Shown here one piece after another: positions 29,098 to 49,381 of a stretch of DNA of 64,000 nucleotides. The stretch comes from Phyllobates terribilis (taxonomy: Eukaryota): NCBI RefSeq assembly GCF_046119375.1, contig NW_027362764.1:596812001-596876000 (forward strand), read 5' to 3'. Every line of letters starts with the position of its first letter. Position 1 is the first letter of the stretch. The position numbers were made by a program, and so were the translations under genes. Under the pieces are notes generated by a model. It did not search any database. It saw nothing but the letters and a program-made list of their open reading frames with translations, and had not been told where the DNA came from.

Positions 29098-29849
29098 AGT
29101 GCAGGATAAATGTGAGCCGAGCCATACTGCGAACTTTGTTAGGCAGGATGAACAAATCAGCAGCAGGTGAAGAATAGAGATAAGCAAATATGTTCGAAAA
29201 ACGACCAACAATTTCAAATTCGTCACGAATATGGCACTTTGGAATTCGTGATCGGAAACACAAGCATTTTTTCTTAAAATTGGCAAAAATTTGGTAAAAG
29301 TGCGGGAAATTATTGTGTTGCCACAAAAGTATTTTTAGCACTTTGGCTACAATAGTGGTGGTGTATGATGAGCGGGGAGGAAATGTTTGATGAGGGGATG
29401 GGGAGAGCTCAGAGGAGCGACGTGCTTGTAATCTTTTTTTTTCCTAACTTTGTGTGCAAATTGCGGCTAGCCAATCAGGGCGCAGGAACCATCCACAATG
29501 TCCAGACGCCAGGGCTTGTGCCATTTGCTGCTGAAATCACATGTCCCTCTCTATGTAAAGAGCGGACATGTTGCTTTATCACCATTTTGTGATTATAACA
29601 GGTCAGAGAGGCTAATCCTGATGCAGCTCCTGATTTGATTAGAGATTTTAGCTAGTTAGCTAGACGGTTGCTTCTAAGTCAGATAGTTTAGATAGCTAGG
29701 GTCCTGTGTGGCTGTGAAATTGACCTTCCAGCAGATTTTTTTTCTTGTGCCATTAGGGAGGTCCAGACAAAGACAGCAGGGCATGTGTCATAGAAGTCTG
29801 TTGTGCACTGCTTTCATTGTACTCCATGCACGAGTACATCTTTAAAAAT

Positions 29850-32650
29850 ATATTTTTTTCTGTAACTAATGTGATTCAGCACGCCATATCTCACCTTCTC
29901 ATTTTGTTGTCGGGAAATTCAGCTGTATGCAGAGCTCATGCAGAGCAAACAAAAATATTTTTTTCTGCTCCTAACGTGATACAGCATGCCATATCCCACT
30001 TTGTCATTTTGTGGAAGTGAAATTCAGCTGTATGCAGAGCTCATGCAGAGTAAAAAAATCTATTTTTTTTGTGACTAACGTGACACAGCTCGCCATATCT
30101 CAGTTTGTCGTTTTGTGATGGGGAAATTCAACTGTATGCAAAGCTCATGCAGAGAAAACAAAAATATTTTTTTCTGTTCCTAACGTGATGCAGCATGCCA
30201 TATCTCACCTTGTCATTTTGTGGTGGTGAAATTCAGCTGTATGCAGAGCTCATGCAGAGTAAAAAATCTATTTTTTTCTGTGACAAACATGATACAGCAG
30301 GCTATATCTGAGTTTGAAATTTCTTGGAGCATATATTCTATTGTATACAGGCCTCATCCACACTAAAAAAATACTTTCTTCTGTTACTAACATGATACAG
30401 GAGGGGAGATCTCAGTTTGAAATTGTTTGGAGCATATATTCTATGTTATACAGGCCTCATCCACACTGAAAAAATACTTTCTTCTGTTACTAATGTGATA
30501 CAGCAGACTAGATTCAGTTTTAAATTGTTTGGAGCATATCTTCCATGTTATACAAGCGTCATCCACAGTAAAAAAAAATACTTTTTTCTGTTACTAACAT
30601 GATACAGTAGGGGAGATCTCAGTTTGAAATTGTTCGGAGCATATCTTTTATGTTATACAGGCCTCATCCACACTAAAAATACTTTCTTCTGTTACTAACA
30701 TGATACAGTAGGGGAGATTTCAGTTTAAATTGTTTGGAGCATATCTTCTATTTTATACAGGCCTCATCCACATAAAAAAATACTTATTTCTGTTACTAAT
30801 GTGATACAGAAAGCCATATTCCACCTTGTCATTTAGTGCTGCTGAAATTCAGCTGTGTGCAGAGCTGTTGCAAAGTAAAAAAACAATTTTTTTCAGTTGC
30901 TAATGTGATTCAGCACACCATATTTCACCTTGTCATTTAGTGCCCCTGAAATTCAGCTGTGTGCAGAGCTGTTGCAGAGTAAAAAAACTTTTTTTTTTCA
31001 GATGTTAATGACGCACCCCCTGGGGCCGTGGGGTACTCGGTAGCCGGGCCGGTCCTTTTTGGGGTAGTCACGGCGGCAGTAACCTGGTCCGTGGCCCCGG
31101 GCGGTCAAATAAAGAACAGTCAATTGGGGAAATAAAGATTTGGGGACAACGTTCGTGAAGCCACCCGTGGTATGCAGCTACATGGGGCAACCGCTGCGGT
31201 GCAGATCCACTGGGGCTGATAGTGACGCAGCAGAGTTGGTTCAGATCTCCACGGGCAAAGCTAAGCTCCAGGGTAGTATAAGGTGATTTGAAAAAGTACA
31301 TGTTGTCGGCAGGGACAGTGTAGTGCAGGGCAGGTGACGCAGCAATTAAGTTAAGGACACAGCGGGGTGCAGTCTTCAGGTTTTACTCAAAGTTGCTAAG
31401 TTCTCCAGGTTACAGTTACTGGTTTGTAAGCATCCACATCATCCTGTGTCCTCCGGGGAAGTGATCCAGCCAACTCTCAGATATCTTAGGAGCACTTGAA
31501 TGGGACCCCTTTCGGTGTACCTCTCCAAGTCGTCTCACTACGCTGGCTCTCGCCCTCCTGCCCTGCGCCTCACACACAGTGTCCCGAGTTAGTGGCGGCG
31601 GGCTTTGTCGGGCGATGTCCGGTCTTTCCCCTTGGTCCTATATGGCCCCCTTTTCAGCGATTATATGTGGACTGTGGCTACAGCACCTTAAGATAACGCA
31701 ACCTCCAGTTTGCTAGCTGAGCCTTAAAGTACTCCACTAGTCTGGGGCCGGTCCCCTCATGCGGCCTTGATCCCTCCATGGTCACTGTGAACTAGGGCAC
31801 ACGGGTGGCCTCCCGCACTCGCCGTGCCCCTTCTGTCTCTGGAGTCCCTCTTACTGCTTCGGTGTTCTTTCCTCACTCTCCTCCTGGGCCTCTCTGACTG
31901 GGCCCTTCTCCTCCACGGTTCACTGAACTCCTCTCTTGCTCCCCTGATCAGAACTGAACTCCTGCTCCAAGCACTGAAACAGGAGACTGGCCCTAAGTCA
32001 GATCTCTCCACAGAACTTCTTCTAGATGTTTCTACCTGTCTTTTATACTCTTCTGTCTGTGCTCCCCTAAACTTCTTCCTCCACCCACCTCCTCCACTTA
32101 GTTCCACCCTCCTGACAGGGACCAGGGACTGTGCTCTCCCTCAGGAGCAATCTCACCCTTTCCTAATGAAATGGTGTAGTTTTGGATGTGGGTGTGTGGG
32201 TCCCGGGTAGTGCTCCCTCCTTACCTGAGAGTGGGGTACCACACCTCTGGCTGAGATGCAGTACCTCTGTGGCAACTGGACCCACAGGGGCGCCACACTA
32301 ACATGATACAGCACGCCATATCTCATCTTATCATTTTGTGGCGGTGAAATTCAGCTGTATGCAGAGCTCATGTAGAGTAAAGAAATCTTTTATTTTCTGT
32401 GCCTAAAGTGATGCAGCACATCATATCTCAGTTTGTAATATTGTGGCTCTGAAATTCAGCTGTATGCAGAGCTCATGCAGAGTAAACAAAAATATTTTTT
32501 TCTCTGACTGACATGATGCAGCAGGGGAGATCTCAGTTTGAAATTATTTGGAGCATATATTCTAAGTTATACAGGCCTCATCCACAGTGAAAAAAAATAT
32601 TTCTTCTGTAACATCATACAGGACGCCAGAAGTCAGTTTCAAATTTTTGG
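29850..32650. repeat. ~104-bp tandem array with two monomer types in blocks, split by a solo LTR
   Basis: Type A GAAATTCAGCTGTATGCAGAGCTC at 29914, 30019, 30123, 30228; type B GAGCATAT..ATACAGGCCTCATCCAC at 30327, 30430, 30532 and onward. Confidence 0.9.
31009..32297. mobile_element. Solo LTR, 1,289 bp
   Basis: TGACGCACCCCC...GGGGCGCCACA; flanks TTAA/CTAA (4-bp TSD with one mismatch); the tandem array resumes on both sides. Confidence 0.85.
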
Positions 32651-33394
32651 ATGCAGATATTGTTCTCACAGGGGTACACATGATAAAATTGAAATTGTTA
32701 TTCTGACTACTGTGGTATGTAAAGCAGGCTATATTTCATCTTTTAATTCTTTGGTGAAGATACTGTTCTCCATACAGGGGTATATATTAGTGATGAGTGA
32801 GCACTAAATGTGCTCAACTTAGTGGTTCAGCACTTTCTCAAAACCTAACTAGATCTGTCAGAGCTGCTTGTGAAAGTACACTGCGTGTGTATCGTTTTCA
32901 GAAAGTCAGCTACAGCTTCCGACGCCATAGCAGTGCATCACCAGCATTTGCAGCTTCCAGCTCACAGACTGGTGTGCAATGTCACCACACGTTGGAAATC
33001 AATGCTGCAGATGTTGGGAAGGATTTGTGAGCAACAGAAGGCAGTTGTTGTGTACCAGCTTCAACACGCCCGTTGGAATTCAGGACAGCCTCCGCACTTA
33101 AGAGCTGATGAGTGGGCATGGATGTCTGACATCTGTGCCGTCCTCCAAAATTTTGAGTACTTCACCAAGATGGTGAGTGACGATGACGACACAATTAACG
33201 TCACCATCTCGTTTCTGTGTCTACTGAAATGCTCGCTGCTCACAATTAAAGATGAGGCATTGCAAGCGGAGCAAGGAACTATACAGGGTGATGCTACACA
33301 GCCCAGCCTCATCTCATCTCAATGCGGTTTGGGTGATAATGAGGAGGAGGAGAACATGGACAGTTGTCCTCTTGGTGAGGACAAGAAAGTCTTG

Positions 33395-34216
33395 GAAGTT
33401 TTGATACCCCTCTTTCAGTCTGTGGGAAAGCTGTATGAGTTTCTTTTAATGATGACCTTCAGTGGCCTAAACCATGGCTTTGCTTATGCACATTATTTCT
33501 CAAAACACATTGCATATCAGGCCATTGCCCAACTCTGTAGTTATGAAATTCAAGGCATGAAGATCTTTGTGTGTCGAACCACCTAGAAGTGTTAGCTGAT
33601 GTTGGACGGGCTGCCATTGCTTATGGAACAAGCTGCATTAGAGGACTTCCTTGGAGAAATGATAGCCGGAGCAGATATGGTTTCATTCTATGGCAGTCCT
33701 TTCACCAACCTAAAGAATATGGCTGTGGTGAAATAAAACTCTCACCAAGAAGCAGCCCTGGCTAAGAAAAGTCTGTGTGAAGATTCCCGGACACTCTATG
33801 GCTGCTTTTTTACTGTGGACTGGCTCCAGCAATCTATAAGATTTAAGATGCAATCTGGCCCCTTGGCAAAGCACAATTCTGTTCTCCCTCTGATATCTAA
33901 CAAACAGGTCATGCTGGAGAAACTTGCACCTACTGCTACTCAGTGTCTTCAGCTCCTTTGTGAGAAACTAATTTTTGAGCAGCAAGTCTACCAAATAAAA
34001 TTCCTGAGATATGGAAATTGGTGATGGCTTCACTTCTGGTACTGGGTGCTAATACCAAACCATGGCATGCCATTCACTGGATATTCCTGGCTGGTTGAAG
34101 ACAAGCTCATTCCCACAGAAAATTACCAGCAAGCTAAGGAGATGGTGGCCTCTATCATCATGAAGGAGTTAGCTCGTTGTACAGGAGACCGACCACCACT
34201 GCTGTCTACCTTGTGA
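33395..34216 (+). pseudogene. dnd1: Processed (intronless), 5'-truncated dead end homolog 1 pseudogene: RRM1 C-terminal part, RRM2 and C-terminal dsRBD-like domain; 4 premature stops, no frameshift; 3' UTR continues to 34247 and at ~41741-41796
   Basis: [100 protein letters not shown]. This matches vertebrate DND1 as recalled ([52 protein letters not shown]). Confidence 0.9.
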
Positions 34217-35599
34217 ACATTGTGTTGAAGCTTGCAAGGATTAAGAGTAGTGATGAGCAAGTACTAAAATGCTCAGGTACTCGTTGCTCGGGTTGAGCAA
34301 ATTGGAATACTCTGGTGCTCAACCCGAGCAACGAGCCCAATGTAAGTCTAAGGGAAACTCGAGCAGTTTTCCGGTGGCTTTCCCCGGCGGTCGGCAGAGG
34401 GCCTAAAAATTGCCCAAATTGATGGGAACAGTGCTCAAATGACATGGGAACAGCATAGGAAAGACCCCTGGAAGCATTTCTGACTCCCAGGTTACTGCTG
34501 TCAACAACGTTGTCAGAGTATTACGCCACTTTTACGAACTCACAATAAAACATACAAAAACAAAACAAAATGGATTTTCCTGGGAAATATATCAAGGAAC
34601 ATCCTTTCCAGGGTAATGACTTGTATATAAGGCAAAATAAATAACCAAAACCAAAAATACTCCTCCACACCTTGGGCTATGTTCACACGTAGCGTTTTTG
34701 ATGCGTTTTTGCACTTTTTCATTGCTTTCAACAAAGACAAATGCATTCACTGGGAAATGTCATTTTAACATTTTACAACCTTATCTGGCCATGTGGTGTG
34801 TGACACATCATCAGACACATGCATACAGTGCTGAAAAGACATGGGAACAGCATGGGGAAGACCTCTGGAAGCTTTTCAGACTCCCAGGTCACTGCCTAAA
34901 TGTGTGCAAATCACCACCATGCACCTGTCATTGCAGACTTGCAACAATCACCGTCCACGTCCTTGTCCCAGTGCAGCGTTCAGATGTCCCTACCCCATTC
35001 CTTGGAATGCAAGCACAAGTATGCAGCCAGCCACCCACCCACCCACAGGCTGCAATAATATATTACCAAACTTTTGACCGCTACTTGCACTTGAAATGTG
35101 GCCATTTAGGCTCATGCGGCGGAAGCTTTTCATAACCTCATGCCGGCGGCGGCCTGGTATCCATACTCGGTCCCCAGCCGCCACTGTTCCTCCCGGTGTC
35201 GTCTCCGCCTTCCACAAGCACGGGTCCCACAACATTACTAATGCCCTCCCCAGTGCACTTACTGGGAAGGACCGCCTAACCACAAACACGTGGACAGGTG
35301 AATGTGGCCAGGGACGGTACGAAGCCAGTCCACAGCTTTTTTTGCTGAGTTGTATTTCACCACAGCCATATTCTTTAGCTTGTTGAAAGGACTTGGGAAA
35401 CCATATCTACCCAGCTGTCATTTCTCCGAGAAAGTCCTCTAAAGCTGCTTTCACTTAAAATGTGGCCATTTAGTCTCGTGCAGGCGAAAGCTTTTCACAA
35501 CCTCATGCCGGCGGCGGCCAGGTGTCCATACTCGGTCCCCAGCTGCCACTGTTTCTCCCGATATCGTCTCGGGCTGCCAAGGGCTGCCAAAATTTTCGA

Positions 35600-36620
35600 A
35601 AAACCCCACTAAGAATTTAAAGACACATAGAGCAGGGCCACAGTAATGACAAATTCCCATTAGAAAGGAGAGAGTCTGCTATACAGTTATAGGGTATGCA
35701 GTGAGTCCAACGGCTGACCAATTTTAGGAAAAACCCCACTAAGAATTTAAAGACACATAGAGCAGGGCCACAGTAATGACAAATTCCCATTAGAAAGGAG
35801 AGAGTCTGCTATACAGTTATAGGGTATGCAGTGAGTCCAACGGCTGACCAATTTTAGGAAAAACCCCACTAAGAATTTTAAGACACATAGAGCAGGGCCA
35901 CAGTAACAAGAACGATGTGTTCCCATTAGAAAGGAGAGGGTCTGCTATACAGTTATAGAGTATGCAGTGAGTCCAACGGCTGACCAATTTTAGAAAAAAA
36001 AACACTAAGAATTTAAAGACACATAGAGCAGGGCCACAGTAACGACAAATTCCGATTAGAAAGGAGAGAGTCAGAATACAGTTATTGGGTATGCAGTGAG
36101 TCCAACGGCTGACCAATTTTAGGAAAAACCCCACTAAGAATTTAAAGACAAATAGAGCAGCGCCACTGTTTCGACAAATTCTCATTAGAAAGGAGAGAGT
36201 CTGCTATACAGTTATAGGGTATGCAGTGAGTCCAACGGCTGACCAATTTTAGGAAAAACCCCACTAAGAATTTAAAGACACATAGAGCAGGGCCACAGTA
36301 ATGACAAATTCACTTTAGAAAGGAGAGAGTCTGCTATACAGTTATAGGTTATGCAGTGAGTCCAACGGCTGACCAATTTTTTGGAAAACCCCACTAAGAA
36401 TTTAAAGACACATAGAGCAGGGCCACAGTAACAAGTATGACATGTTCCCATTAGAACGTAGAGGGTCTTCAGTACAGTTATAGGGTATGCAGTGAGTCCA
36501 ACGGCTGACCAATTTTAGGAAAAACCCCACTAAGAATTTAAAGACACATAGAGTAGGGCCACAGTAATGACAAATTCCCATTAGAAAGGAGAGAGTCTCC
36601 CATAGTGTTGGCCTATGCAG
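35600..36620. repeat. 130-bp tandem array (~8 copies, with 135-136-bp variants) in the 3' arm of hAT-C
   Basis: AAACCCCACTAAGAATTT at 35601, 35731, 35861, 36126, 36256, 36386, 36522. Confidence 0.95.
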
Positions 36621-37018
36621 TGAATGTAAGTGATGACAAAAATTTGGAGGCACTTCAATGCCCCTTGGAAGAGACGTGGAAGAGGGCCTCATAAAAAAAA
36701 TGTTCCCATTAGAAAGGAACGGGCCTCCTATACTTGTAATGCCCATGCACTAAGTGTATGGGCTGACAAACATTTACCCCTGGGGGGTATACATGGACAT
36801 ACTGTCTAAAAAATTTTTTTACGGGCATCATAAACAACCTTTAAAACAATGATGTGGGTGTTGCATCACGGACCATGGTCACCCTGGTGATATGGTGTAG
36901 GATGGGGAGATTGAGGAGGACAAGAGCAAATAGCCAAAATCAGGAAGCGTATACCCATGTCTGGGTGTGAAAAGGTGCATAGGAATACACCTCCCAAGAA
37001 AAGACACTGGATTTGAGT

Positions 37019-40000
37019 TTATGTTGCTCTGCTATCATTCAGTGGTGTTGAGAAGTCTGGCCCAATCCAGCCCTTGTTCATTTTTTTATAAGAGTCAGCC
37101 TGTCAGCATTTTCAGTTGACAGGCGGATGCGCTTATCAGTTATAATTCCACCAGCGGCATTAAAAACCCGCTCTGATAAAGCGCTGGCTGCATAGCAGGC
37201 CAGGACCTCCAAGGCATAGAGAGCCAGTTCATTCCACGTATCCAGCTTGGATACCCAATAATTTTAAGGCACAGAGGAATCACGGAGGACATTGGTACAG
37301 TCGACAAGGTACTCCCTCAGCATCTTCCAAAACTTTGCACTCCTTGTGAGAGTACCCCGCGCCTCAGGGCCTGTGCGATAAGAGGGTCTGAGAAAACTCT
37401 CCCAGATCTTTGACAGTGTTCCCCTGCCTCTGCTGGATTGGAGTTGTTTCTCTCTCGCCTGCAGTCCTTGGTTGTCCAACGAAGTGTGCTCTCTGCCGCC
37501 AGCATTTTCAGATGGGAATTTTTTTAATAGTTCCGTAACAAGGGCCTTCTGGTACAGCCCCATTTTTGTAGACCTGTCCGCCTCAGGAATAAGAAATATA
37601 AAGTTCTCTTTGTAGCATGGGTCTAGAAGTGTCACCAACCAGTAATGACTGTCACCCAAAATTTTGAGAACGCGAGGGTCATAGGAAAGGCAGCATAACA
37701 TAAACTCAGCCATGCGTGCCAGACTGCTAACAGGCAAGACTTCCGTGTCCTCACCAAGAGGATGACTGACCATGCTCTCCTCCTCCAACTACTCCTCCTC
37801 TCTGTCCTCTGGCCATCCATGCTGAACAGACGGTATGACAGCTGTGCAGGTAGTACCGTCTATAGTGCATGAAACTAGCTCCTTTCCTTCCTCCTCCTCC
37901 TCCTCTTCCTCATTGTCACCCAATCCACATTGGGTTGAGATGAGGCTTGACTGTGTGTAATCACCCTGTATGGCTCCTTGCTCCATCTCATTGTGCTCCG
38001 CCTGCAATGCATCCTCTTTGATTGTGAGAAGAGAGCGTTTCAGAAAACAGAGAAGTGGGATGGTGATGCTAATTATGGCATCATCACTGCTCACCATCTT
38101 GGTGGAGTCCTCAAAGTTTTGGAGAATGGTACATATGTCTGACATCCATGTCCACTCCTGAGGTCTTATGTGTGGAGTCTGAACTGAATACAGACGGCCT
38201 TCTTGATGCTGGTACTCAACAACTGCCCTCTTCTGCTCACAAATCCTTCCCAACATCTGCAGTGTAGAGTTCCAATGCGTGGGGAAATCACACACCAGTC
38301 TGTGAGCCGGAAGCTGCAAATGCTGCTGAAACACGGCAAGGGCGGCGGAAGCTGTAGCTTACTTTCTAAAATGGGCACACAGGTGGCGTACTTTATCAAG
38401 CAGATCTGGCAGCTCCGGGTAGGATTTGAAAAACCGCTGAACTATGAGGTTAATCACATGGGCCAGGCATGGTACGTGTGTGAGCTCGCCTCACCTTAGA
38501 GCCGCCACCAGGTTCCGGCCATTGTCACACACCACCATGCTTGGCTGTAGGTTCAGCGGTGTGAGCCACAGATCTGCCTGCTCTTTCAGAGCTGTCCACA
38601 ACTCTTCAGCATTGTGCGGTTTGTCACCTAAGCATATTAGCTTCAGCACAGCCTATTGCCGCTTGGCTGAGGCAGTGCTGCAGTGCTTCTAGCTTGTGAC
38701 TGATGTGGTCATTTCAGAGATGGAGGCTGAAGAGTTGGAGAAGGCTGAGGTGCAGGAGCCGTAGACCGTGAGGGGCAACCCTGATTGACCTAGGGCCCGC
38801 AATCCTTGGCGTCGGGAGGACCTGTTCCGTCCCAAGGTGCGCCTGGGTCCCGACTTCCACTAAATTAACCCAGTATGCCGTCAGCGAGATGTACCGTCCA
38901 TGCCCACAAGCACTTGTCCATGTGTCCGTAGTTAGGTGGACTTTCCCGGTAACTGCGTTGTTGAGGGCACGGCTAATGTTTTGGGCCACATGCTTGTGTA
39001 ATGCGGGGATGGCACAGCGGGAGAAATAGTGGCGGCTGGGGACCGAGTACCGAGAGACGGCAGCCGCCATCAGGTTGCGGAATGCTTCCGTCTCCACAAG
39101 CCTAAAAGGCAACATTTCGAGTGCAAGCAGTCGTGAAATGTGAGAATTTAGTAGTGTGGCCTGTGGGGTGTTGGCTGCATATTTGCGCTTGCATTCTAAG
39201 GACTGGGGTATGGACAACTGAACGCTGCGCTGGGACAAGGACATGGAGGGGCTTCCGGATGCTGCTACCTGAGAGTGCGAAACCTCAGGTGCAGGGCAGG
39301 AGGCATCTTCGCATGCATCATGGACAGGTGATTGGCTTGCATGCACAACAGCAGAAGAAGCAATTGTGCCACCTGCAGACACTGTTCCTGGACCATGGGG
39401 TTCGGCCCACAAAGTCGGGTGCTTTGCTGCCATGTGCCTGATCATGCTGGTGGTGGTCAGGCTGGTCGTTTTGCTACCCCTGCTGATGTTGGCCTGGCAG
39501 GTGGTGCAAATGGCCTTTTTGGGGTTATTGGCAGAGTCTTTAAAAAACAACCATACTCGGGAAGACCTAACAGTTGTACTGGCAACTTTCTTCGTGTTGG
39601 TGTTGCGGGGAACGGTTGCCTGCCTTCTGTCTGCGGCCACCACACTGCTTCATCCTGCCTGCTGGGGTGCTCTGCCTCCCTCCCGCTGTGTGCTGCTGTC
39701 CTCGCTCTGCATGTCCTCCTGCCAGGTTGGGTCAGTTACTATATCATCCACCACCTCGTATTCCACTTCCGCACCCTGGTCCTCCTCCTGACTTTCGGGC
39801 AATTGTGTCTCATCATCGTCCACCTCTTGTGACACTTTCCCACCGTCGCCTTCATGTGACCGTGGCTGCTCAAACATTTGGGCATCGCTGCACGCAATCT
39901 CCTCTTGCCCCGCTTCAAGTGGATCGGGCGAGAGGCCCGAATCTGTAAATGGAAAAGTGAACAGCTCTTCAGAGTATCCAAGTGTGGGATCAATTGTCTC

Positions 40001-40342
40001 TGGGCACTCTGCATGGTGGGAGGAAGGAGGATCAGGGTGAGGAATATGCGGTCCAGACTCACGGCTACTGAGACTTGACCGTGTGGAAGACAGGGTGGTG
40101 GTGGTGGTGGCTAAGTGACTGGAATCATTATCCGCTATCCAACCAACAACCTTTTGACACTGCTCTGGGTTCAATAGTGGTGTGCTGCGGTCCCCTAGAA
40201 ATTGGGACAGGAAGGTCAGGCAAGAATATGTGGGTGTTTGATGTGGCACAATTTCAGCTTACCCACAGCCTTGTCCTCGGCCTCTGCATGCACCATTACT
40301 ATCACATCCAGTTCCCTGTCTTTTACCACGTGCCTTGCCCAT
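37019..40342 (-). pseudogene. hAT-C transposase, decayed (stops and frameshifts)
   Basis: ATG at 40342 (MGKARGKR). ORFs 39650, 38714 (BED finger, LLALEMLPF, VHLTTDTWTS), 37789 (PTHWNST) and 37264; C-terminus DRLTLIK..GWIG ending TAA at 37019. Confidence 0.9.
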
Positions 40343-40399
40343 TTTAAATGGAGGACAGTATCTTCAACGCTCACTACAAATGACTGAGTTTGGAGCGAA

Positions 40400-40750
40400 C
40401 TTATATGTGATCCGTGTGACGGAGAAAATAGAGTTTTAAATAGCTGGCCTGTAGGTAAGTAGTTTGAACAGCAAACTGCTGTGATTTGCTTCACTGACAC
40501 ACTGAAAGAAATTTTTAATGGAGGCCAGAAATGGCAGTATTTTCTGACAACGTATATGTGATCCATGTGACGGAGAAAACAGAGTATTAAATACCAGGCC
40601 TATAGGTAAGTAGTTTTAACAGCAAACTGCTGTGAATTGCTTCACTGACACACTGAAAGAAATTTTTTATGTAGGCCAGAAATGGCAGTATTTTGTTACT
40701 AAGTATATGTGATCCGTGTGACGGAGAAAACAGAGTTTCAAATAGCTGGA
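40400..40750. repeat. 151-bp tandem repeat (~2.3 copies) just upstream of the hAT-C start codon
   Basis: ATATGTGATCC at ~40403, 40554, 40705. Confidence 0.9.
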
Positions 40751-41422
40751 TTTTTAGCGATGTAATATGGAAAGGACCTGGCTGTATTCTGCAGTGCCAA
40801 CAAGCAAATGGCGCAGAAAAACGGTGTTCTCTGGATTTCTTTTTAAGCAAGTAATGAGGATTAAGATCCAAAGAAAAGTATTCCTGGCCCCTGAGATCTA
40901 GGCCTTTGTATAGAAATATCTAACAGCAGCAGAAGGCAGAATTGGAATGGAGCCTTTTGTGCTATGTGCACTTCAGTCTGCTATATACCCTGCCTGCCTG
41001 ATATCTCTGCAGATGGATTAGTTAGTCCTCAAATGGACTGTTTGTTAAGATGGATATGTGTAATGTCCGTTTTTTTTTCCCCACATTAAGTAATACACAG
41101 GCAGATCTCTCATTGACGCAGCAGCACCTCTCACTACACTGTCCGGAGTGACTGTGACAAACATGGTGGCACCAGGTCTGATATAGACCCTATGACGCTG
41201 TGCGGCCAGCCAATCACTGTAATGCCACAACCAACATGGCTACGGCATTACAGTGAGTGGCAGGCAAACCCTGCATGTTGATTGACACTCTAAAGAGCAC
41301 CAAACATGCAGGGAGGGGACCAGACCTCCCGCCGAGCAACCCCGGAAATATTCGGCGAGCAGTGAGACGCTCGGGCGAGCACTGAGCAGTAGCGAGCATG
41401 CTCGTTCATCACTAATTAAAAG

Positions 41423-41732
41423 TAGTGATGAGCGAGTATGTTTTGTTAACCATTTTGCCTAGTATTCTCAGCCGAGCACCGAGTATTTATAGCGTGTTCG
41501 GTGATATGTTTGAATCATTCCCGTGTGCATGATTTGCGACTGTTTGACAGCTTTAATACATGTGAGGAATGTGTAAGAAGCAGACATTCCTCACATGTAT
41601 CAAAGCTGTCAAAAATCGCAAATCATGCACATGGGAGTGATTCAAACATATCACCGAGCACGCTATAAATACTCGGTGCTCGGCCGAGTATACTCGGCGA
41701 AAGGGTTAAGAAAACATACTTGCTCATCACTA
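41423..41732. mobile_element. 310-bp fold-back hAT MITE
   Basis: TAGTGATGAGC...GCTCATCACTA; ~150-bp nearly complementary arms with a ~10-nt loop; flanks ATTAAAAG/ATTAAGAG. Confidence 0.93.
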
Positions 41733-44031
41733 ATTAAGAGGTTACATTAGCGAGTCTGGTTTTTATACTAAAGATCCTGCGTGTTTTTATAGTTTTATAT
41801 GAGCACACAGAGACCATGGCTGCTGTAGCAGTGCATCCAGACCAGGATAGTGGTGGAGAAATTGCTCTACCATCAAATTGAAGATGCGAGCCATGCAAGG
41901 CACATGTATGAGGTTGCCCCAGCGTAGTGCTGCCTCCAGGTTTGCACCATTATCGCACACGGCCTTCCCTTGCTCCAGGTTCAGTGGTGACAGCCATTGC
42001 TCAATCTTGGCATGGATAGCTATCCACAACTCTTGATCAGTTTGACTGCGATATCCAAGGCATATTCATTGAAACACTGCCTGATTGCAGAGAGCCCTGG
42101 CAGCGCATTACGAATGTCGGAGGATTCTATCTGCACTGTTGTAACGTGTGTCTGTAACGGGGGGCAGGGTGGCAGTCGGTGGTGAGTGTCATGTCAGTTT
42201 CAGTGAGTAAATCCTCACCCTGGCCCACTACAGAAAAAGGGGACTCGGAGAATCCCTGGGTGTTTGTGTGTTGAGGTGTCTCTGTAGAGAATACCTCCAT
42301 ACTCACTTCTGTTTCGCCATCCTGGATGTTGAGTCTTTTAGCCTTCAGAAGGCGAAAACCAGACCAGCTTAAAAATGTAAAAACATCTTTACTTGCAGCC
42401 ACAGTCACATACAGGGAGTAGCAAGTGATACAGTCTCTTTGTGATCTCTTCACATACAGCGGCACTTTACCAGCGATGAAAGTCATGGACACCGATTTGG
42501 ATATGAAGATCAACGCCGAGCACGCCAGCTCTCTGGGTAACTCCATTCTCTGTCCCACTGCCTGACCTGCTTGGATCCACCTCCCTGATGAGGCTGTCCT
42601 GTCTTGGCACGTAAAGTGAAGTTCCCACATTGACCTCTCCATTTACATCTGTTCCTGTTGTCCCCGCTGTCTAGACTGTTCAGATTCACCTTCCAGATAA
42701 GGTTGTCCAAAAACTCCCAGACTGTGACACACACACACCCTTCTCCTGTACTTTCTCCTGTGTCCTCCTGACAGGTCCTCACTAGTCACTGTCCCTCACT
42801 CAACTCACTCTCCCTGCAATCAGGAAGTGATTCCTTTCTTCAGTAAATCTGCCACTCCCACACTGGAGCAGCTCCTAAACCCCTTAATTCTTTCCCAACC
42901 ATAACAGCATACTCTGTGTGCTATAGTGCCCACCTCTGCACTACTTCTTCTATCAATCTAATAGTTTACCCGCACCAACCTATATTGAACCTATAAGTAA
43001 CCCATCAGAGATTAGATCATATGAATGCTCATATATAAACATAGAACACAGAATTATGTGCATTAAGAGGGAAGAGGCGCATGACCGTCCTGGTCACCCT
43101 CTTACATACCTCCCTCCTAAAACATGGTTGTCCTGACCATGAAAATACCTGTAAAAAGAAACACTAATGCACATTTAAAACATTCAACAAATATGTTTAC
43201 TGTACATTAAAATGCACAATAGATCAATTCACTTTAATCACTTCTTCTTGCTAGTCAACCTTGACCTCGGTCCCACTCGGTTGGGACCTGGAACACAGAG
43301 TTCAAGTTCCTTTGAATATGGGTCCATCTGACCCCGGTCCCCTTGCTCCTGAGACCCACAAAAAAAATGTCCATCACATGCCCTCTGGCCAACAAATCCT
43401 GCTCTGACAGTCCTGGAGCAGTGACCCGGCACGATCCTCAGGTCGTCCTGACAGTTTCTCCCCCTCCCTCCTTTTTGCTGAGTATGGTCCCTTTAAGAAC
43501 CATGTACTGCTCAATAGCTCCTATACGAGAGCTCAGTCCATGGAGCAGTTGCACACAGTCCTTCAGTGTGGGATATTTAACCCTATTAGGATTCAGTCCC
43601 GTAATCCAGCAGGGGAATGCGCAAACGTGCGCAACAGAACTTGGAGAGGGGGAAACACACAAGCATATAGTCATCTTCTGGCCGTCCGGCCAGCACCATT
43701 GCTTCCTGGTGCTATCAGGGCTTCTTGCCCTTTAAGAGATGCAGAACAGTGTCTATTGGTGACCACATCCTTGGCCACCTCGGGTCGTCACCGGACTGAA
43801 CAGGGGCTCCTGCCCATAGGAACACAGTACAGTTCCTTTTGCTTGTTTCACAGTGCAACTAGCACAACTTGGGTGGCGGTTCACACACCGCCCGTTTAGT
43901 CAGCGGCTTCCGCATAGTGGCTGTAGTTTACCACCCCATTGTCCTTGAAGATCAGGACTGTCTGTCCCTACGATCCTGTAGAAGACGAGGAGCCCCCACG
44001 CTCACTCCTGGTCCTCTCGCGTACAGCTGGG

Positions 44032-45267
44032 CTAGGTGCCAGCCTCCTCTGTAGGGGTACTTGTTGCGGGGGCAGCTAGTTCATGCAGCGCCTGGGCCGT
44101 AGACAGGGTCTGCAGCAGAGTAACAGACTCGGATATTTGTGAGGTCATCTCACTGGGGTCTGGTTCCTGATCTGCAGGCACCACAATCAACTGCTGCCCA
44201 ACGGCCGCGGTTTCCGGCCACACAGGATGGTTTGCGGCCTGCTGCTGCTCTGCCTCAGGCAATATAGCGACAGCCACTGCATACGGGCCTCGGGGCCCAT
44301 ACTCCTTAACGAATGACACTCGACGACTGCCCCATAGCAAGGGGCCGCAGCCGCGAACAGATCCGGCATTCACTTATACTTTTTCGCTGGTATCAGTCTC
44401 CTGAATGAACCCATAGCCGCGGGAAAGCTCATAGTACCTCACTAGGCCGTATGTAATGCGGGCTCTGCATCTCTTAATGAATGCGGCACTCCCGCCTCTT
44501 CTTCTCGGCGATTACCCCTCGATCCACCATTCCTCCTCCTCTCTGGGGGTTCTCACAGCTTCTTGGTAAGTTGGGGGTGATGGGCTAGACGCAGGAGTGA
44601 GTGGGTCAGGGGGTGAGTCTGGATCAAGACTCATCGCCGCCATGGTCACCAGAGCTGGCTCTCCATCATCCGCAGGCACCACTGCTGCCGTTGGTCCTCC
44701 CGCCGCCCAGATTGGTTCAAGCACTTCCTCCTTGTGTAGCCTGCGCCGCTCCCAGTCCATGTGTCCAAGGCCACCGCGATGTAGCATTGTCTCAGGCTGT
44801 TGCTGCTTCACCGTCTCCTTCAGCAATGGCGCCGCACTGCTTGACACGAGGGATCCTCCTTCCAGGCTCCACCTGTCCGTAGGTGGATCCGCCTCCACCA
44901 ATTCCTCCCACTCTGACTCTGGTTCTGGGATCTTCAATGGTGAGCAGGGTTTCTTCTTTCTTTGCCGCACACACCGCAGGCGGGCACTGCTCACAGGGGG
45001 CCACAGTTTCAGCCCGGCCCGGCTTCCATGCCATACAGTTTTTTGTGCTGTTTTGCGCTCAGGATGCCCACGATGGGCGGAGCTATCGGCAGCCTCCACG
45101 CCATTATCCGCCATCTTGGAACTCACTTTGCTGGCCACCATCTTGAGATCGCCATTTTCGTCCACCTTCTTGGTTTGTACGCTTTTCAATTCTTTCCGTT
45201 TCATCTGTTTATCTTCAGGCGCCTCATCTGCGCCAGGGGCATTTTTCTTGCGGTCCTTATCCAGCAT
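44032..45267 (-). pseudogene. ~411-codon ORF with a cold-shock domain (44260-44455), two premature TAA stops
   Basis: ORFs 44512-45393 and 44032-44373 are in the same frame. The read-through contains YGLVRYYELSRGYGFIQETDTSEKV*VNAGSVRGCGPLLWGSRRVSFVKEYGPRGPYAVAVAIL. Confidence 0.75.
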
Positions 45268-45319
45268 CTTCTCTCTCTTGCCACAGGACCTGCTCACCTC
45301 GCTGTTTGGATGCTTGGAC

Positions 45320-45342
45320 TTCGCATCCTGCCGACTACGCCA
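45320..45342 (-). promoter_or_regulatory. Primer-binding site complementary to the tRNA-Ser 3' end
   Basis: Plus strand TTCGCATCCTGCCGACTACGCCA versus vertebrate tRNA-Ser(AGA/TGA) 3' end TTCGAATCCTGCCGACTACG-CCA (1 mismatch, recalled); lies 2 nt from the LTR boundary at 45345. Confidence 0.88.
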
Positions 45343-48126
45343 AATGTAGCGAGGTGGCACGGGGTGGTAGTTATGGGCGAGTCTACTGAGCAACCTTCAG
45401 CGAGCACCCCGGCACCTCGCACATGAATAAACGGATAGAGTCAGTGCTTTTAAATACAACCAACATTACTGACAGATTGCAGTGTTTAGGCAGGTGCAGC
45501 AGATATTCTCAGGCCCAGGTCTTATGCAGGGACAATAAGCCATTTCTCTACCTTCCGACTCAGTTTATTACAGCAGGCAGACTTTCACCTTCAGCACACC
45601 CTCTGTCCTCGTTGCCGCTTGTCCTAGGGAAGCTGTGGTACTCGGATAAGGCTCCTATACGTTTTCCACAGTCCCTGTTCTCTCTCGCTGTGCTACTCGG
45701 ATATAGATATATATATATATATGTACATCCCTTCTCCTCAGCCTCTGTTCGGTCCTCAGCACCTGCTGAGGGCTGTCGGCACTCTCTCTCTCTCCCGCGC
45801 ACCTTCTAACCCTGGCCTGGGTCTATGGCTGCCGGACTCTGCTTAGTGCCTAGTCTCTGTCCTCGGATCCGCGCACCTCCTAACCCTTGCTCAGGTCTCT
45901 GGCTGTCGGACTCTCTGGTACTCACATGGACCCTTGATGTCTCGTGTACTGGCCTCTTCTCTGAGTGCATTTACACCATCACTGGTCCTTACTCATGGGC
46001 TTATGGCCCCACTGCCTCGACTCCTTCTTTGCGGGGACACCCCCTTCTTCACACAAGCTCCTTTTCTCTGGAGCTCTTCTCTGACACCTTGTCCTGGGCA
46101 TGGCCGCCCGGACACTGCTACTTGACTTCCTTTCTCCTGTCTCTAAGCTCACTGCCTCTGCTCCTCCCTGCTATGTTCCTCCCCCTGGCCAGCTCTGCTA
46201 TGCTGCTGTAACTAGGCAACTACTGCACTGTACATTATAGGGAGAACACATAAAAGCATCAACATTACATTAGACATTACATTCACACGGGTACAACTAC
46301 TGCCGCACGTGGGAATAATAACAGTGAAAAGTCCTTCTTAAAGGGGTGGTGGCGTCCTTCCCCCTTACATGTCTCATTAAGGCAGAGGTTGAGGTCACAG
46401 GTGGAGGCCCTAGAGGAGGTAGAGGAGGCAGAAGCACTGGAGGAAGTGTTATATACAAAGGTTTGTCCCGCAAATCTTGGGGATTCTAAGACTTGCTGTC
46501 TAGTGACACCTTGGTGTCAAGTGGTTTAGTTCTCCATCCCCTGGTGTGTAGAAGTTTAGTTCTCCAACCCTAGCTGTTCATTAGTTTATTTTTCCAACAT
46601 CTGTTGTCTGTTAGTTTAGTTCTCCATGTTCTGGCCCAGTGCCCAGTCAGTGAGATATAAAGCCTCTGGCCATGCTTGCTTGTCCTGGTGTCAGTGGTGA
46701 AATGCACCCTGTCAGACCTAGATTTTTTCAAGGAATAGGTGATGTTGTCTGCAACATGCTGGTGTAGCCCAGGCACAGCTTTCTTAGAGAAGTAATGGCG
46801 ACTGAGAAACTGGTACTGGGGACTGCGATAGCCATCAGCTTTCGGAAACTGTCTGTATCCACCAGGCGGAAAGGCAGCATTTCTGTGCCCAACAGATTGG
46901 AGATGGTGAAGTTCAAGCTCTTTGCTTTGGCATGTGTAGGAGGAAACAATCTTTTATGTGACCACAACTGTGAGATTAAGGGCTGGATGCTGTGCTGAGA
47001 GAGGGTGGAGTAAGGTGAATACGACAAGCTTCTGGACTGTGATAGAGGTGCAGATGGAGATGTTACAATGGATTTAGAAAGATGGAGTGCGTTTGGTGTC
47101 TGACATCAGTCAAAAACAGCAGGCATGTCCACTTCCGTAACAGCTGACGGGCTCTCACTCCCTCCGACTTTAGCGGGTAAACAAGTGGAGGCTCTTCTAC
47201 CAGAGACCTGTGCGAGAACACTTGCCATGGTGCCGGAGGAGGCAGAAGCAGAAGATGCAGTTGATGGGGTGGCCAGTGGTTGGCAAGGCCTGCTAGTCTG
47301 CATTTTAGCACAGTGAAATTCCCAGATTGACCCATGTTGATCGCACATGTGCCAGTTCATGCATGTAGTAGTCAAATTATTGCATTTTTTTTACTTTACT
47401 CTGTAATTTTTAACAAAGTTGGCAGATAACATGAGTTGTCATTTTTTGAGGTCTCAAAAAGGACCCAGGCTAGGCAACTAAAGACCCTTGAACGCTACTG
47501 GCCACTGCCAGAGTTGAGGCTGAGGATACAGTGCTTGTTATAGTTGCTTAACTCTGTGTCTGTGCGGGAAGCCGCAACGTAACCTCCTCGTCTTCCTCCT
47601 CCTCAACCTCCTCAGCTGAGCTACTCAGCTGCATGCCTGTGGGTTCACACCAAGTGGGATCTACAACCTCATCATCATCCTCTCTGTTCTCCCACTCCTT
47701 GCCCTGATAGTCACACTCTTCCTCTTCCTGCCCTGACAGCACAGTACTGTATAGGTGTGTCTCAAGTATCTGAGTCTCATCAGGATCAACTCCATCTCCA
47801 GGGGTTAATATCTGGTGACGAGGGGTGGATTCTGCTGGGACCCTACTGAAAAAAATTTGGGGCATTGCTGTACATGCTTTCCCCCTCTTGAGTCTGTGAA
47901 GCTTTGGATCAGACCTCTGATGCCCCGGAATAGAATGTGTGAACAGCTCTGCAGACTCACCCATCTGTGGTTCCCAACAGTCAGTTGGGCAGTTGGAGAG
48001 TTATGACACGGGTGAAAACAAGGGTAATTGGAATGCCACCTCTGAAGACTGTACTGTGTGTGATGTTAAGGTGGAGGAAGAGGAGTAGAGGCCACTTGAT
48101 GAAGCGCTTATCATCTACTGCAGCAC

Positions 48127-49381
48127 ATGTTCTTTCTGGCCCGCATCTACAAAGTGTACCGCTGTCTCGGCACCACAGACTTGTCCCTATCTTGGATCAC
48201 TTCATACCTAACTGACTGGACATTCATTGTCTCCCACTCACACACCACCTCCTCATCTCGTCTCCTATGTGTCGGAGTCCCCCAAGGTTCAGTTCTAGGA
48301 GCCCTGCTCTTCTTCATCTACACCTTCGGCCTGGGACAGCTCATAGTCTCACGGCTTTCAGTATCACCTGTATGCTGATGACACACAGATCTACCTCTCT
48401 GGACCTGATATCACCTCCTTACTAACCAGAATATTACAATGTGTGTCTGCTATTTCATCTTACTTCTCTGCTAGATTTGTAAAACTTAACATGGATAAAA
48501 CTGAATTCATTATCTTTCCACCATCTCATTCACCCCCCCAACTGACCTATCCATCTAAGTCAATGGCTTCACACACTCCCGAGTCCCTCAATCTTGACTT
48601 TGATCTGTCCTTCAAATGTCAGATCCAAGCCCTTTCCACTTGCTGCCGACTCCAATTCTAAAATATATCTCCGGGATCCCCACATTCCTCAACCATGAAT
48701 CTACAAAAACACCAGTGGACACCCTCATCATTTCCCGCCTCAACTACTGCAAGCTCCTGCTCTGTGGCCCCCCTTCTACCACTCTCGCACCCCTCCAATC
48801 TATCCTAAACTGTGCTGGCCAACTAATCCACCTATCACCCCACTATTTCCTGGCTTCTCCCCTCTGTCAATTCCTGTGCTGGCTCCCCGTTGCCCAGAGA
48901 CTCCAGTTGAGAAACCTAACTTTTGCATACCAAGCCATTCAAAACCTTTCTCCTCCATACATCTGTGACCTTGTCAATCTGTACTTACCTGTGCGCAACC
49001 TCCCATCCTTACAAGATCTCATTCTCTACTTCCCTCTTATCTCTTCGTGCCACAATTGCATACAAGATTTGTCCCGTGCATCTCCCCTATTGTGGAACTC
49101 TCTACCACAACACATCAGACTCTTGCCTACCGTGGAAACCTTCAAAATGAAGCTGAAGACACACTTCTTCTGACAAGCATACAATTTGCAGTAATCCTTA
49201 CTTCACCATACCGCTGCATGACCAGCTGTACCCTCACCTACTGTATCCTCACCCATTCCTTGTAGATTCTTTGCGCGCCCACGCGGGCATGGTCCTCTCT
49301 CCTCTTGTATGATTCGGTGACTCCTTTTCAGATGTAAAGTGGCATGGAATAAATGGCGCTATGATAATAAATAATAATAAT
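48127..49381 (+). mobile_element. L2 LINE 3' portion (RT and tail), 5'-truncated
   Basis: SWITSYLTD..GVPQGSVLG.LLFFIYT..YADDTQIY..LNMDKTE..SRLNYC..LQSILN..FKMKLKTHF; tail GGAATAAATGGCGCTATGATAATAAATAATAATAAT. Confidence 0.92.

What the first reader, a model, noticed from the sequence alone, without database searches (positions are those of the whole stretch)
32870..34247. dead end (dnd1) retrocopy fused in frame to a hAT transposase
ORF 32870-33586 is chimeric. hAT sequence ends at PLGEDKKVL (33394, compare HPLGEDTEVL in hAT-C) and continues in frame as Dnd1 RRM1. The Dnd1 frame then runs 274 codons to TGA at 34216 with four point stops and no indels. It crosses the KKSLCE|DS position, where human DND1 has an intron as recalled, so it looks mRNA-derived. 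Dnd1 is a germ-plasm RNA-binding protein essential for primordial germ cells, so germline retroposition is plausible. No poly(A) or TSD is visible, and the copy sits between two oppositely oriented, truncated hAT coding fragments (33394 and 41797). That fits cDNA capture at a break or transposon-borne gene capture. A transposase-RRM fusion, or dnd1-matching small RNAs from a TE-dense locus, would matter biologically.
Basis: partly seen in the sequence, partly recalled or inferred. Interest (0 to 1): 0.75.

Follow-up and report, generated by a model that had tools for sequence, protein, structure and literature searches.

The report
Dead dnd1 cDNA copy inside hAT transposon
A broken, intron-less copy of the germ-cell gene dnd1 is joined in frame to a fragment of a hAT "cut-and-paste" transposase in a poison-frog-like genome; the dnd1 piece is present in many copies, so it appears to have travelled as transposon cargo, and this copy shows no sign of function.

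Summary
Window 33395-34216 is collinear with residues 78-349 of Phyllobates terribilis dead end homolog 1-like (82% identity). It has four internal point stops, no frameshift, and the natural stop. All 126 word-search hits are DND1, not A1CF, RBM46 or RBM47. hAT homology ends exactly at 33394, and the joint is in frame (ORF 32870-33586).

The copy runs without a break through the exon 3/exon 4 junction. That junction is seen in bird genomic reading frames and matches the 154-codon exon 3 reported for fish. A spliced mRNA origin is therefore well supported. The frog parent gene itself could not be fetched.

An 8-nt target duplication (ATTAAGAG) shows that a 7.2-kb hAT element and a 310-nt miniature element later inserted into the copy's 3' tail. 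The nested hAT carries a second, inverted dnd1 scrap (about 35322-35451).

In two independent DNA data sets, 48 to over 128 different contigs cover each listed dnd1 site. The dnd1 piece is therefore a dispersed repeat. Whether this exact joint recurs was not measured.

There is no poly(A), no start codon context, no annotated fusion protein and no clear RNA evidence.

The scan noted dnd1-hAT associations on four other pieces of this genome.

Verdict: a dead member of a hAT family that carries cDNA-derived dnd1 cargo.

The parts
32788..32807 (+). hAT terminal inverted repeat stub (TAGTGATGAG...), joined directly to the middle of the transposase coding region; this is an internal-deletion derivative
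   Evidence: The 21-nt motif is found only at 32788 and 34248, with 0 expected by chance. The 10-mer also ends the MITE and the nested hAT. The stub aligns with the left end of the nested hAT for about 30 nt.
32808..33394 (+). Fragment of the middle part of a hAT transposase. It lies downstream of the BED finger and upstream of the hAT dimerisation domain and has no Pfam domain of its own.
   Evidence: 78-88% nucleotide and 66% protein identity to the inverted hAT copy at 38459-37735. 37-43% protein identity to the hAT at 6344-6814, whose reading frame ends in Dimer_Tnp_hAT.
32870..33586 (+). Chimeric open frame: 175 hAT codons plus 63 Dnd1 codons. It is a leftover frame, not a gene. Its first ATG is at codon 45 and its upstream side is a transposon end.
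33395..34216 (+). Dnd1-derived coding sequence, equivalent to residues 78-349 of P. terribilis Dnd1-like. It covers part of RRM1, RRM2 and the DSRM, has 4 internal stops, and ends at the natural stop.
34217..34247 (+). 31 nt after the stop, presumed dnd1 3'UTR. The last 8 nt (34240-34247, ATTAAGAG) are the target site of the later hAT insertion.
34248..41414 (-). Nested hAT element of 7.2 kb with its transposase on the minus strand (reading frames 37264-40249, BED finger). It also holds an internal 130-nt satellite at 35577-36775 and inverted transposase scraps at 34951-35320 and 35445-35579.
   Evidence: TIR at both ends. The 8-nt duplication reads ATTAAGAG on one side and ATTAAAAG on the other. 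zf-BED. Self-comparison. Satellite.
35322..35451 (-). Second Dnd1 scrap (RRM2 region, equivalent to about 33630-33826, with four indels). It lies inside the nested hAT between transposase scraps and is bracketed by a 135-nt direct duplication (35080-35214 / 35444-35579).
   Evidence: 83% nucleotide identity over 112 nt. Alignments. Duplication. Another, diverged contig crosses the scrap/hAT joint (X1 record 8).
41423..41732 (.). Palindromic miniature hAT-type element (MITE), inserted at the same target site and flanked by ATTAAAAG / ATTAAGAG
41741..41797 (+). 57 nt that continue the interrupted sequence after the nested insertions. It is presumed to be further dnd1 3'UTR but is not verified. 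It contains no A-run.
41800..42085 (-). End of an inverted N-terminal half of a transposase from a different hAT sublineage. It continues at 46398-48161 after a 4.3-kb insertion. It abuts the dnd1 tail.
   Evidence: 73% nucleotide identity to 6432-6147, and 46636-48161 matches 5917-4356. It is only 65% identical to the left fragment in their 88-nt overlap.

Best explanation
This is a dead, 5'-truncated copy of spliced dnd1 mRNA, running from residue 78 to the stop plus about 90 nt of tail. It sits as cargo inside a rearranged, non-autonomous hAT transposon of a dendrobatid (poison frog) genome.

The likely history is as follows. A dnd1 cDNA or retrocopy became joined to hAT sequence in the germline of a dendrobatid ancestor. 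This happened after the split from Aromobatidae and near the base of the Phyllobates lineage. hAT elements carrying the cargo were then mobilised in trans and multiplied. Their copies were scrambled by the deletions and template switches typical of hAT gap repair. This copy then decayed neutrally, acquiring four stops and losing many arginine (CGN) codons. Later it was split by a nested hAT and a MITE.

Shown: the Dnd1 identity, the exact in-frame joint, continuity across a conserved intron site, the nested insertions with target duplications, the second scrap, and the multi-copy status of the dnd1 segment.

Inferred: that the frog parent gene has that intron, that hAT transposition rather than another process did the multiplying, and the order of events. 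The in-frame joint is read as a relic or chance (1 in 3), not as a working gene.
For: Identity.

Placement: the copy falls in a 100/99-supported clade with D. tinctorius and three P. terribilis Dnd1 proteins. It is sister to the P. terribilis copies (82/79). It keeps 12 states shared with D. tinctorius that P. terribilis has since changed.

Spliced origin: in bird genomic reading frames the Dnd1 homology ends at P0001 residues 207-209. Homology begins at residues 52-56 in those frames that reach the exon's 5' end. Fish exon 3 is residues 43-196, the same 154 codons, and four exons are typical of vertebrates (PMC6382762). The window is continuous across nt 33784, and another genomic contig also crosses it (X1 record 6). 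The 5' break at codon 78 lies about 24 codons inside exon 3, so it is not an exon edge.

hAT context: TIR TAGTGATGAG, 8-nt duplications, a BED finger and a hAT dimerisation domain in neighbouring copies.

Cargo and multi-copy status: there is a second scrap 83% identical inside the nested hAT. 116,723 and 90,943 contigs from two DNA samples lie on the 2.8-kb stretch. Each listed dnd1 site is covered by 48 to over 128 distinct contigs. Most of those contigs carry the parent-like letter where the window has a private change, for example CGA for CAA at 33747 and TGT GGA for TGG TGA at 34021-34022.

Decay: 29 private residue changes plus 4 stops in 272 codons. 7 of 11 arginines are changed, 5 of them to His or Gln.
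Against: No poly(A), no target duplication around the dnd1 piece itself, and both ends truncated. The way the cDNA entered (LINE-type insertion or template switch at a break) is therefore open.

Only the left TIR of the carrying element is identifiable. The right flank is a transposase fragment of another hAT sublineage, so a complete TIR-to-TIR cargo element is not shown in this window.

No displayed contig bridges 33394/33395 with 31 nt or more on both sides, so recurrence of this exact joint is untested.

The frog parent's introns were not seen directly.

Only one (in-frame, probably ancestral) length difference in 822 nt is fewer indels than expected for a long-dead sequence.

Depth sums from contigs are not copy numbers.
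Confidence: 0.78

Rival explanations
1. An ordinary LINE-made processed pseudogene of dnd1 landed once, by chance, in hAT debris. The link to hAT is coincidental, and later deletions removed its poly(A) and target duplication.
For: The copy is intron-less and 5'-truncated, as LINE-made retrocopies often are. The locus is saturated with transposons, so any insertion would land in one.
Against: The dnd1 segment is covered by dozens to over 128 distinct contigs per site in two DNA samples. A second scrap sits inside a different hAT copy 1 kb away. Other arrangements that join dnd1 to hAT are seen in contigs, for example 34131 joined to 35238. There is no poly(A) or target duplication.
Confidence: 0.07
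2. DNA-level capture or duplication. The piece was copied from a genomic dnd1 paralogue that was already intron-less in this lineage, or from a parent lacking the intron, by gap repair or segmental duplication without any RNA step at the moment of capture.
For: P. terribilis has at least three annotated dnd1-like genes on one chromosome, two with odd ends (P0002 and P0121). Joints with short repeats (GAAGTCTTG|GAAGTTTTG at 33386-33403) fit template switching.
Against: The exon 3/4 intron is conserved from fish to birds, so the ultimate source must still have been spliced RNA. This rival changes only the last step.
Confidence: 0.1
3. A functional or recently functional host-transposase fusion gene, or a transposon-encoded RNA-binding protein that helps the element in the germline.
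For: The joint is in frame. The 822-nt Dnd1 part has no frameshift. An earlier scan note reports another in-frame dnd1-hAT joint elsewhere in the genome (unchecked).
Against: There are four stops, the first 63 codons after the joint. The transposase part is an internal fragment preceded by a transposon end, with no start context. RRM1 lacks its first beta-strand and RNP2, and the RNP1 arginine is lost. No annotated protein combines hAT and Dnd1 domains. An in-frame joint has a 1 in 3 chance.
Confidence: 0.03

Closest known systems
Pack-TIR / Pack-MULE type transduplication (host gene fragments carried by terminal-inverted-repeat transposons; Tan et al. 2021, PMC8277862)
   Same: A host gene fragment sits inside hAT-type sequence and forms a chimeric frame with transposon sequence. 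hAT is the superfamily with most animal Pack-TIRs (208 of 370), and three of the four multicopy cases were in a frog.
   Different: The cargo here is intron-less (cDNA-derived). That survey discarded such cases by design. The cargo is far more repeated than the three-copy frog example. A complete TIR-to-TIR unit with cargo is not shown in this window.
Processed pseudogene (LINE-mediated retrocopy)
   Same: It lacks an intron at a conserved site, is 5'-truncated, decayed neutrally with point stops and CpG-type arginine loss, and its parent is a germline-expressed gene.
   Different: It has no poly(A) tail and no flanking target duplication. Its 3'UTR is cut to about 90 nt. It is present in many copies associated with a DNA transposon.
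Host-transposase fusion genes (domesticated transposase domains spliced to host domains, e.g. SETMAR; from general knowledge)
   Same: A transposase segment and a host protein segment share one reading frame.
   Different: Those are intact, spliced, conserved genes that use the transposase DNA-binding domain. Here an internal, domain-less transposase piece is joined to a truncated RRM protein, the frame is broken, and there is no gene structure.
Germline-gene-derived repeats that yield small RNAs against their parent (e.g. Drosophila Su(Ste)/Stellate, AT-chX/vasa; from general knowledge)
   Same: A germline gene fragment is amplified as a repeat in transposon-rich DNA, in both orientations.
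   Different: There is no small-RNA evidence here. The resemblance is a hypothesis only.

Membership tests
DND1 (dead end) protein family | Best sequence matches are DND1 rather than the paralogous A1CF / RBM46 / RBM47 / hnRNP R-Q group | tested here: met
   All 126 hits are DND1. The top hits of the second search are frog DND1. PDB: DND1 E 2.8e-16 against hnRNP R 9e-07.
DND1 (dead end) protein family | Domain order RRM1 - RRM2 - DND1-type double-strand RNA-binding domain (PF14709) | tested here: met
   RRM_1 at 33395-33583 and DND1_DSRM at 34025-34213. The copy is collinear with P0001 residues 78-349. RRM1 is truncated at its N-terminal side.
DND1 (dead end) protein family | Intact coding sequence (a gene rather than a pseudogene) | tested here: not met
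   Four internal stops, and the first 77 codons are missing.
Processed pseudogene / retrocopy | Parent's introns absent | tested here: met
   The copy is continuous across the exon 3/4 junction mapped from bird genomic reading frames and the fish exon table.
Processed pseudogene / retrocopy | 3' poly(A) tract | tested here: not met
   There is no A-run in 34217-34247 or 41741-41797.
Processed pseudogene / retrocopy | Target-site duplication flanking the inserted cDNA | tested here: not met
   Both flanks are hAT coding fragments with no direct repeat apart from a 9-nt imperfect repeat at the 5' joint.
hAT superfamily transposon | 8-nt target-site duplication | tested here: met
   ATTAAGAG / ATTAAAAG / ATTAAGAG flank the nested element and the MITE. 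This is not shown for the element that carries the long dnd1 copy.
hAT superfamily transposon | Short terminal inverted repeats of the YARNG type | tested here: met
   TAGTGATGAG is present at 32788, 34248, 41423 and, inverted, at 41405-41414 (one mismatch), 41723-41732 and 12406-12415 (one mismatch).
hAT superfamily transposon | Transposase with BED zinc finger and C-terminal hAT dimerisation domain | tested here: met
   zf-BED in 38717-39643 and Dimer_Tnp_hAT in 6485-7840. The fused fragment 32808-33394 is homologous to the stretch between these domains but has no domain hit itself.
Pack-TIR (transposon-carried host fragment) | Host fragment lies between the two TIRs of one element that has its own target duplication | tested here: inconclusive
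   A left TIR stub is present at 32788. No matching right end or duplication was found.
Pack-TIR (transposon-carried host fragment) | Multiple dispersed copies sharing cargo and transposon joints | tested here: inconclusive
   The cargo is multi-copy (48 to over 128 contigs per site). The scrap/hAT joint at about 35450 is seen in a second diverged contig (X1 record 8). The 33394/33395 joint was not seen bridged in the rows shown.
Domesticated host-transposase fusion gene | Intact, conserved, expressed reading frame | tested here: not met
   Stops are present. No fusion protein was found in the databases. The reads gave no verdict on RNA.

The most novel reading that the evidence does not exclude
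A poison-frog hAT family picked up a spliced cDNA of the germ-plasm gene dnd1 and multiplied it to hundreds of copies or more, in both orientations. There are two possible consequences. The family may now feed dnd1-matching small RNAs (piRNAs) into the germline and so affect the parent gene. Or its founder may have encoded a transposase-Dnd1 fusion, or carried dnd1 RNA signals, that tied the element's activity to germ plasm. The near absence of frameshifts in this copy and an (unchecked) second in-frame joint elsewhere would fit a period when the fused frame mattered.
Probability: 0.1. Interest if true: 0.8.

Novelty: new member of a known kind. Interest (0 to 1): 0.42.

Why it matters
The finding is a clear vertebrate example of two duplication routes acting in series: reverse transcription of a germline mRNA, then spread by a DNA transposon. 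Published animal surveys of transposon-carried gene fragments removed intron-less cargo on purpose and found multicopy cases to be very rare. A highly repeated cDNA cargo is therefore under-described. It also explains why poison-frog annotations list several odd 'dead end homolog 1-like' genes, and it warns against counting them as functional paralogues. A repeat family matching an essential germ-cell gene is a natural candidate source of small RNAs against that gene, but nothing here shows this. The copy in this window is itself inert.

Tried and rejected
- The look-up of encoding contigs for the P. terribilis parent gene was closed. The parental introns and nucleotides, and hence dN/dS, could not be obtained.
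- A word search with a 60-residue query centred on the joint (33305-33484) found only two bird Dnd1 fragments and no joint-spanning protein. A blank here says little, because contig reading frames are short.
- A search for long Dnd1-containing proteins (334-1064 residues) found no hAT-Dnd1 fusion. The only long forms are read-throughs into neighbouring genes in birds and the LAP2alpha-tailed P. terribilis model.
- The search of earlier findings by sequence was blank.
- Reads: no run is on record as RNA. X14 and X15 are only guessed to be RNA. Their depth ratio between the dnd1 part and the neighbouring hAT (about 0.1) is the same as in the DNA runs. There is therefore no verdict on expression.
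- I considered that the left and right transposase fragments are two halves of one element split by an inversion, because they break within 88 nt of the same transposase position. I rejected this: they are only 65% identical in the overlap, and each is closer to a different hAT copy.
- I looked for a right end of the element that starts at 32788. The only further inverted TIR-like site (58059-58068) has no matching 8-nt flank.
- Pfam on piece 33596-33733 and PDB hits for it were noise.
Full report
**1. What is in the sequence**

The frame that opens at 32870 runs 238 codons to TAG at 33584. Continued through stops, it reaches TGA at 34214-34216, 449 codons in all.

Codons 1-175 (32870-33394) are hAT transposase. 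At the nucleotide level, 32808-33352 is 78% identical and 33343-33394 is 88% identical to an inverted hAT copy at 38459-37735. The protein identity is 66%. There is weaker but clear similarity to a third hAT at 6344-6814.

The neighbouring copies carry the family's hallmarks. A BED zinc finger lies in 38717-39643, and a hAT C-terminal dimerisation domain lies in 6485-7840.

The alignment shows that hAT homology ends exactly at 33394, after ...PLGEDKKVL. The reference copy reads HPLGEDTEVL at that point and then continues with transposase sequence.

**2. The downstream part is Dnd1**

- Pfam finds RRM_1 in 33395-33583 and the DND1-type double-strand RNA-binding domain in 34025-34213.
- Against solved structures, human DND1 (7q4l) scores E 2.8e-16. 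The next protein, hnRNP R, scores 9e-07.
- All 126 proteins returned by the word search are DND1, led by Phyllobates terribilis (81%) and Anomaloglossus.
- The copy is collinear with residues 78-349 of P. terribilis XP_073525821 at 82% identity.
- The four internal stops are single-base changes: TAG at 33584, TAG at 33593, TAA at 33734, TGA at 34022.
- The final TGA coincides with the C-terminus of Dendrobates tinctorius Dnd1 (...LLSTL).
- There is no frameshift.

**3. Where it sits in the family tree**

The copy falls in a 100/99-supported clade with D. tinctorius and three annotated P. terribilis Dnd1-like proteins. It is sister to the P. terribilis group, with weaker support (82/79).

It shares the one-residue deletion in EIQ-G with P. 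terribilis. It also keeps 12 states that D. tinctorius has and P. terribilis has since changed. It has 29 private residue changes plus the 4 stops.

The source was therefore a dendrobatid dnd1, after the split from Aromobatidae and near the base of the Phyllobates lineage.

Seven of eleven arginines are changed, five of them to His or Gln. This is the pattern expected from CpG decay in unselected, methylated DNA. That reading is an inference from established mutation biology.

**4. Is it derived from mRNA?**

Indirect evidence is good.

- Reading frames called on genomic contigs of bird-like origin begin their Dnd1 homology at ...G|WVG (P0001 residues 52-56). They lose it right after ...KK(T/S)L.EG (residues 207-209). 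One of them retains the upstream intron in frame.
- A paper on fish dnd states that four exons are typical of vertebrates. It gives exon 3 as residues 43-196, the same 154 codons (PMC6382762).
- An intron conserved from teleosts to birds brackets frogs.
The window runs through it and keeps 82% identity for 143 more codons.
- A contig from another genomic copy crosses the junction as well (X1 record 6).
- The 5' break at codon 78 lies about 24 codons inside exon 3, so it is not an exon edge.

I put the spliced-RNA origin at about 0.85.

**5. The surroundings**

The motif TAGTGATGAG, of the YARNG type typical of hAT ends, occurs at 32788, 34248 and 41423. It occurs inverted at 41405-41414, 41723-41732 and 12406-12415.

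The 8 nt before 34248 are ATTAAGAG. The 8 nt between 41414 and 41423 are ATTAAAAG. The 8 nt after 41732 are ATTAAGAG.

Two elements therefore inserted at one target site, 24 nt past the dnd1 stop:
- a 7.2-kb hAT at 34248-41414, with its transposase on the minus strand;
- a 310-nt palindromic miniature element at 41423-41732.

With both removed, the dnd1 tail continues at 41741 for 57 nt. It then meets, at about 41797, the end of an inverted N-terminal transposase half. That half spans 41800-42085 and resumes at 46398-48161 after a 4.3-kb insertion. There is no A-run in the tail.

On the left, a 20-30-nt transposon end at 32788 is joined straight to mid-transposase. This is the look of an internally deleted hAT.

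The left and right transposase fragments belong to different sublineages, being 65% identical in their 88-nt overlap. They are therefore not two halves of one inverted element.

The 5' joint carries an imperfect 9-nt direct repeat, GAAGTCTTG|GAAGTTTTG (33386-33403). This is compatible with a microhomology-guided switch, but that is an inference.

**6. Is the dnd1 piece cargo of the transposon family?**

Three lines of evidence bear on this.

(a) The nested hAT carries a second, inverted dnd1 scrap at about 35322-35451. It is 83% identical to 33630-33741 and has four indels. It lies between transposase scraps and is bracketed by a 135-nt duplication. It keeps TAC where the long copy has the TAA stop, so that stop arose after the two copies diverged.

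(b) Contigs of two DNA samples from two studies of the same organism label were laid on 32788-35576 at 80% likeness or more. They gave 116,723 and 90,943 contigs. At each listed dnd1 site, 48 to over 128 (the cap) different contigs were counted. Most carry the parent-like letter where the window has a private change. Examples are CGA (Arg) at 33746-33748, GGT (Gly) at 33782-33784, TGT GGA in place of TGG TGA at 34019-34024, and CGC (Arg) at 34031-34033. A single-copy locus would give one or two contigs. Depth sums are not copy numbers, so I claim only 'many copies'. Contigs also show other arrangements: 34131 joined to 35238 on opposite strands, 32921 joined to 33558, and a diverged contig across the scrap/hAT joint at about 35450.

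(c) The scan's earlier notes report dnd1 pieces in hAT on four other pieces of this genome, one of them again 'in frame'. These are unchecked leads and were not used as support.

No row that was shown bridges 33394/33395, so the copy number of this exact joint remains open.

**7. Function**

Nothing points to function.
- The transposase part is an internal fragment without a domain hit, and a transposon end precedes it.
- The first ATG of the frame is codon 45.
- RRM1 lacks its first strand.
- The first stop comes 63 codons after the joint.
- No protein in the databases combines hAT and Dnd1 domains.
- No run is on record as RNA. The two runs guessed to be RNA show the same dnd1-to-hAT depth ratio as the DNA runs.
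- An in-frame joint has a one-in-three chance.

One oddity remains. There is only one length difference in 822 nt, and it is in frame and probably ancestral. This is few for an old pseudogene.

**8. Comparison with known kinds**

The closest described kind is the Pack-TIR, a host fragment carried by a TIR transposon. In animals hAT is the main carrier, and three of the four multicopy cases were in Xenopus tropicalis, with three copies in the example given. That survey removed intron-less cargo by design (PMC8277862).

The present case differs in having cDNA-derived cargo and a far higher repeat number. A complete TIR-to-TIR unit is not shown here.

It is also a processed pseudogene in the sense that it lacks an intron, but it lacks the poly(A) and the target duplication.

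It is not a domesticated fusion gene.

I file it as a new member of a known kind.

**9. Limits**

- The reads tools allowed one call each, and their tables are truncated.
- The window holds no N runs.

Noticed in passing
P0001, P0121, P0002 (P. terribilis XP_073525821.1, XP_073525107.1, XP_073525108.1): P. terribilis has at least three annotated 'dead end homolog 1-like' proteins on one 985-Mb chromosome. One (608 aa) is a full Dnd1 joined to a LAP2alpha-like tail. Another (333 aa) diverges after ...AKPNSL and has an altered exon 2/3 junction. Some of these may be transposon-associated copies rather than working paralogues.
   Followed up: partly
window 42086-46397 (includes 44032-45267): A 4.3-kb insertion interrupts the inverted hAT fragment to the right of the dnd1 tail. 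It contains the stretch another first-reader note calls an LTR element with a Y-box cold-shock domain. Y-box proteins are also abundant germline mRNAs in frogs, so this may be a second germline-gene retro-derived piece in the same locus.
   Followed up: no
window 35080-35214 and 35444-35579: A 135-nt direct duplication (87.5% identical) of transposase sequence brackets the small dnd1 scrap. 8-12 contigs per DNA run join 35183 directly to about 35513-35516, so the usual form of this hAT lacks the bracketed insert.
   Followed up: partly
window 29844-30999, 32297-32787, 35577-36775, 40398-40744, 1-4043: Satellite arrays of 104-110, 130 and 151 nt lie inside or directly against hAT elements. The 105-nt array runs right up to the transposon end at 32788. 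This agrees with the other note that these hATs carry satellites.
   Followed up: no
window 33718-33810: Summed contig depth in this 93-nt bin is several times that of the other dnd1 bins (569k against 27k-230k in X1). A short sub-piece around the exon 3/4 junction may belong to a still more abundant derivative element.
   Followed up: no
window 41423-41732: A nearly perfect 310-nt palindromic miniature element with the same ends as the hATs is inserted at the same 8-nt target as the 7.2-kb hAT.
   Followed up: yes
runs X12, X13, X16, X18-X20 (organisms B, C, D): Runs labelled as three other organisms hold 6-8% of the exact 31-nt words of the dnd1 stretch. Related species may carry the same family or share conserved parent words.
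   Followed up: no
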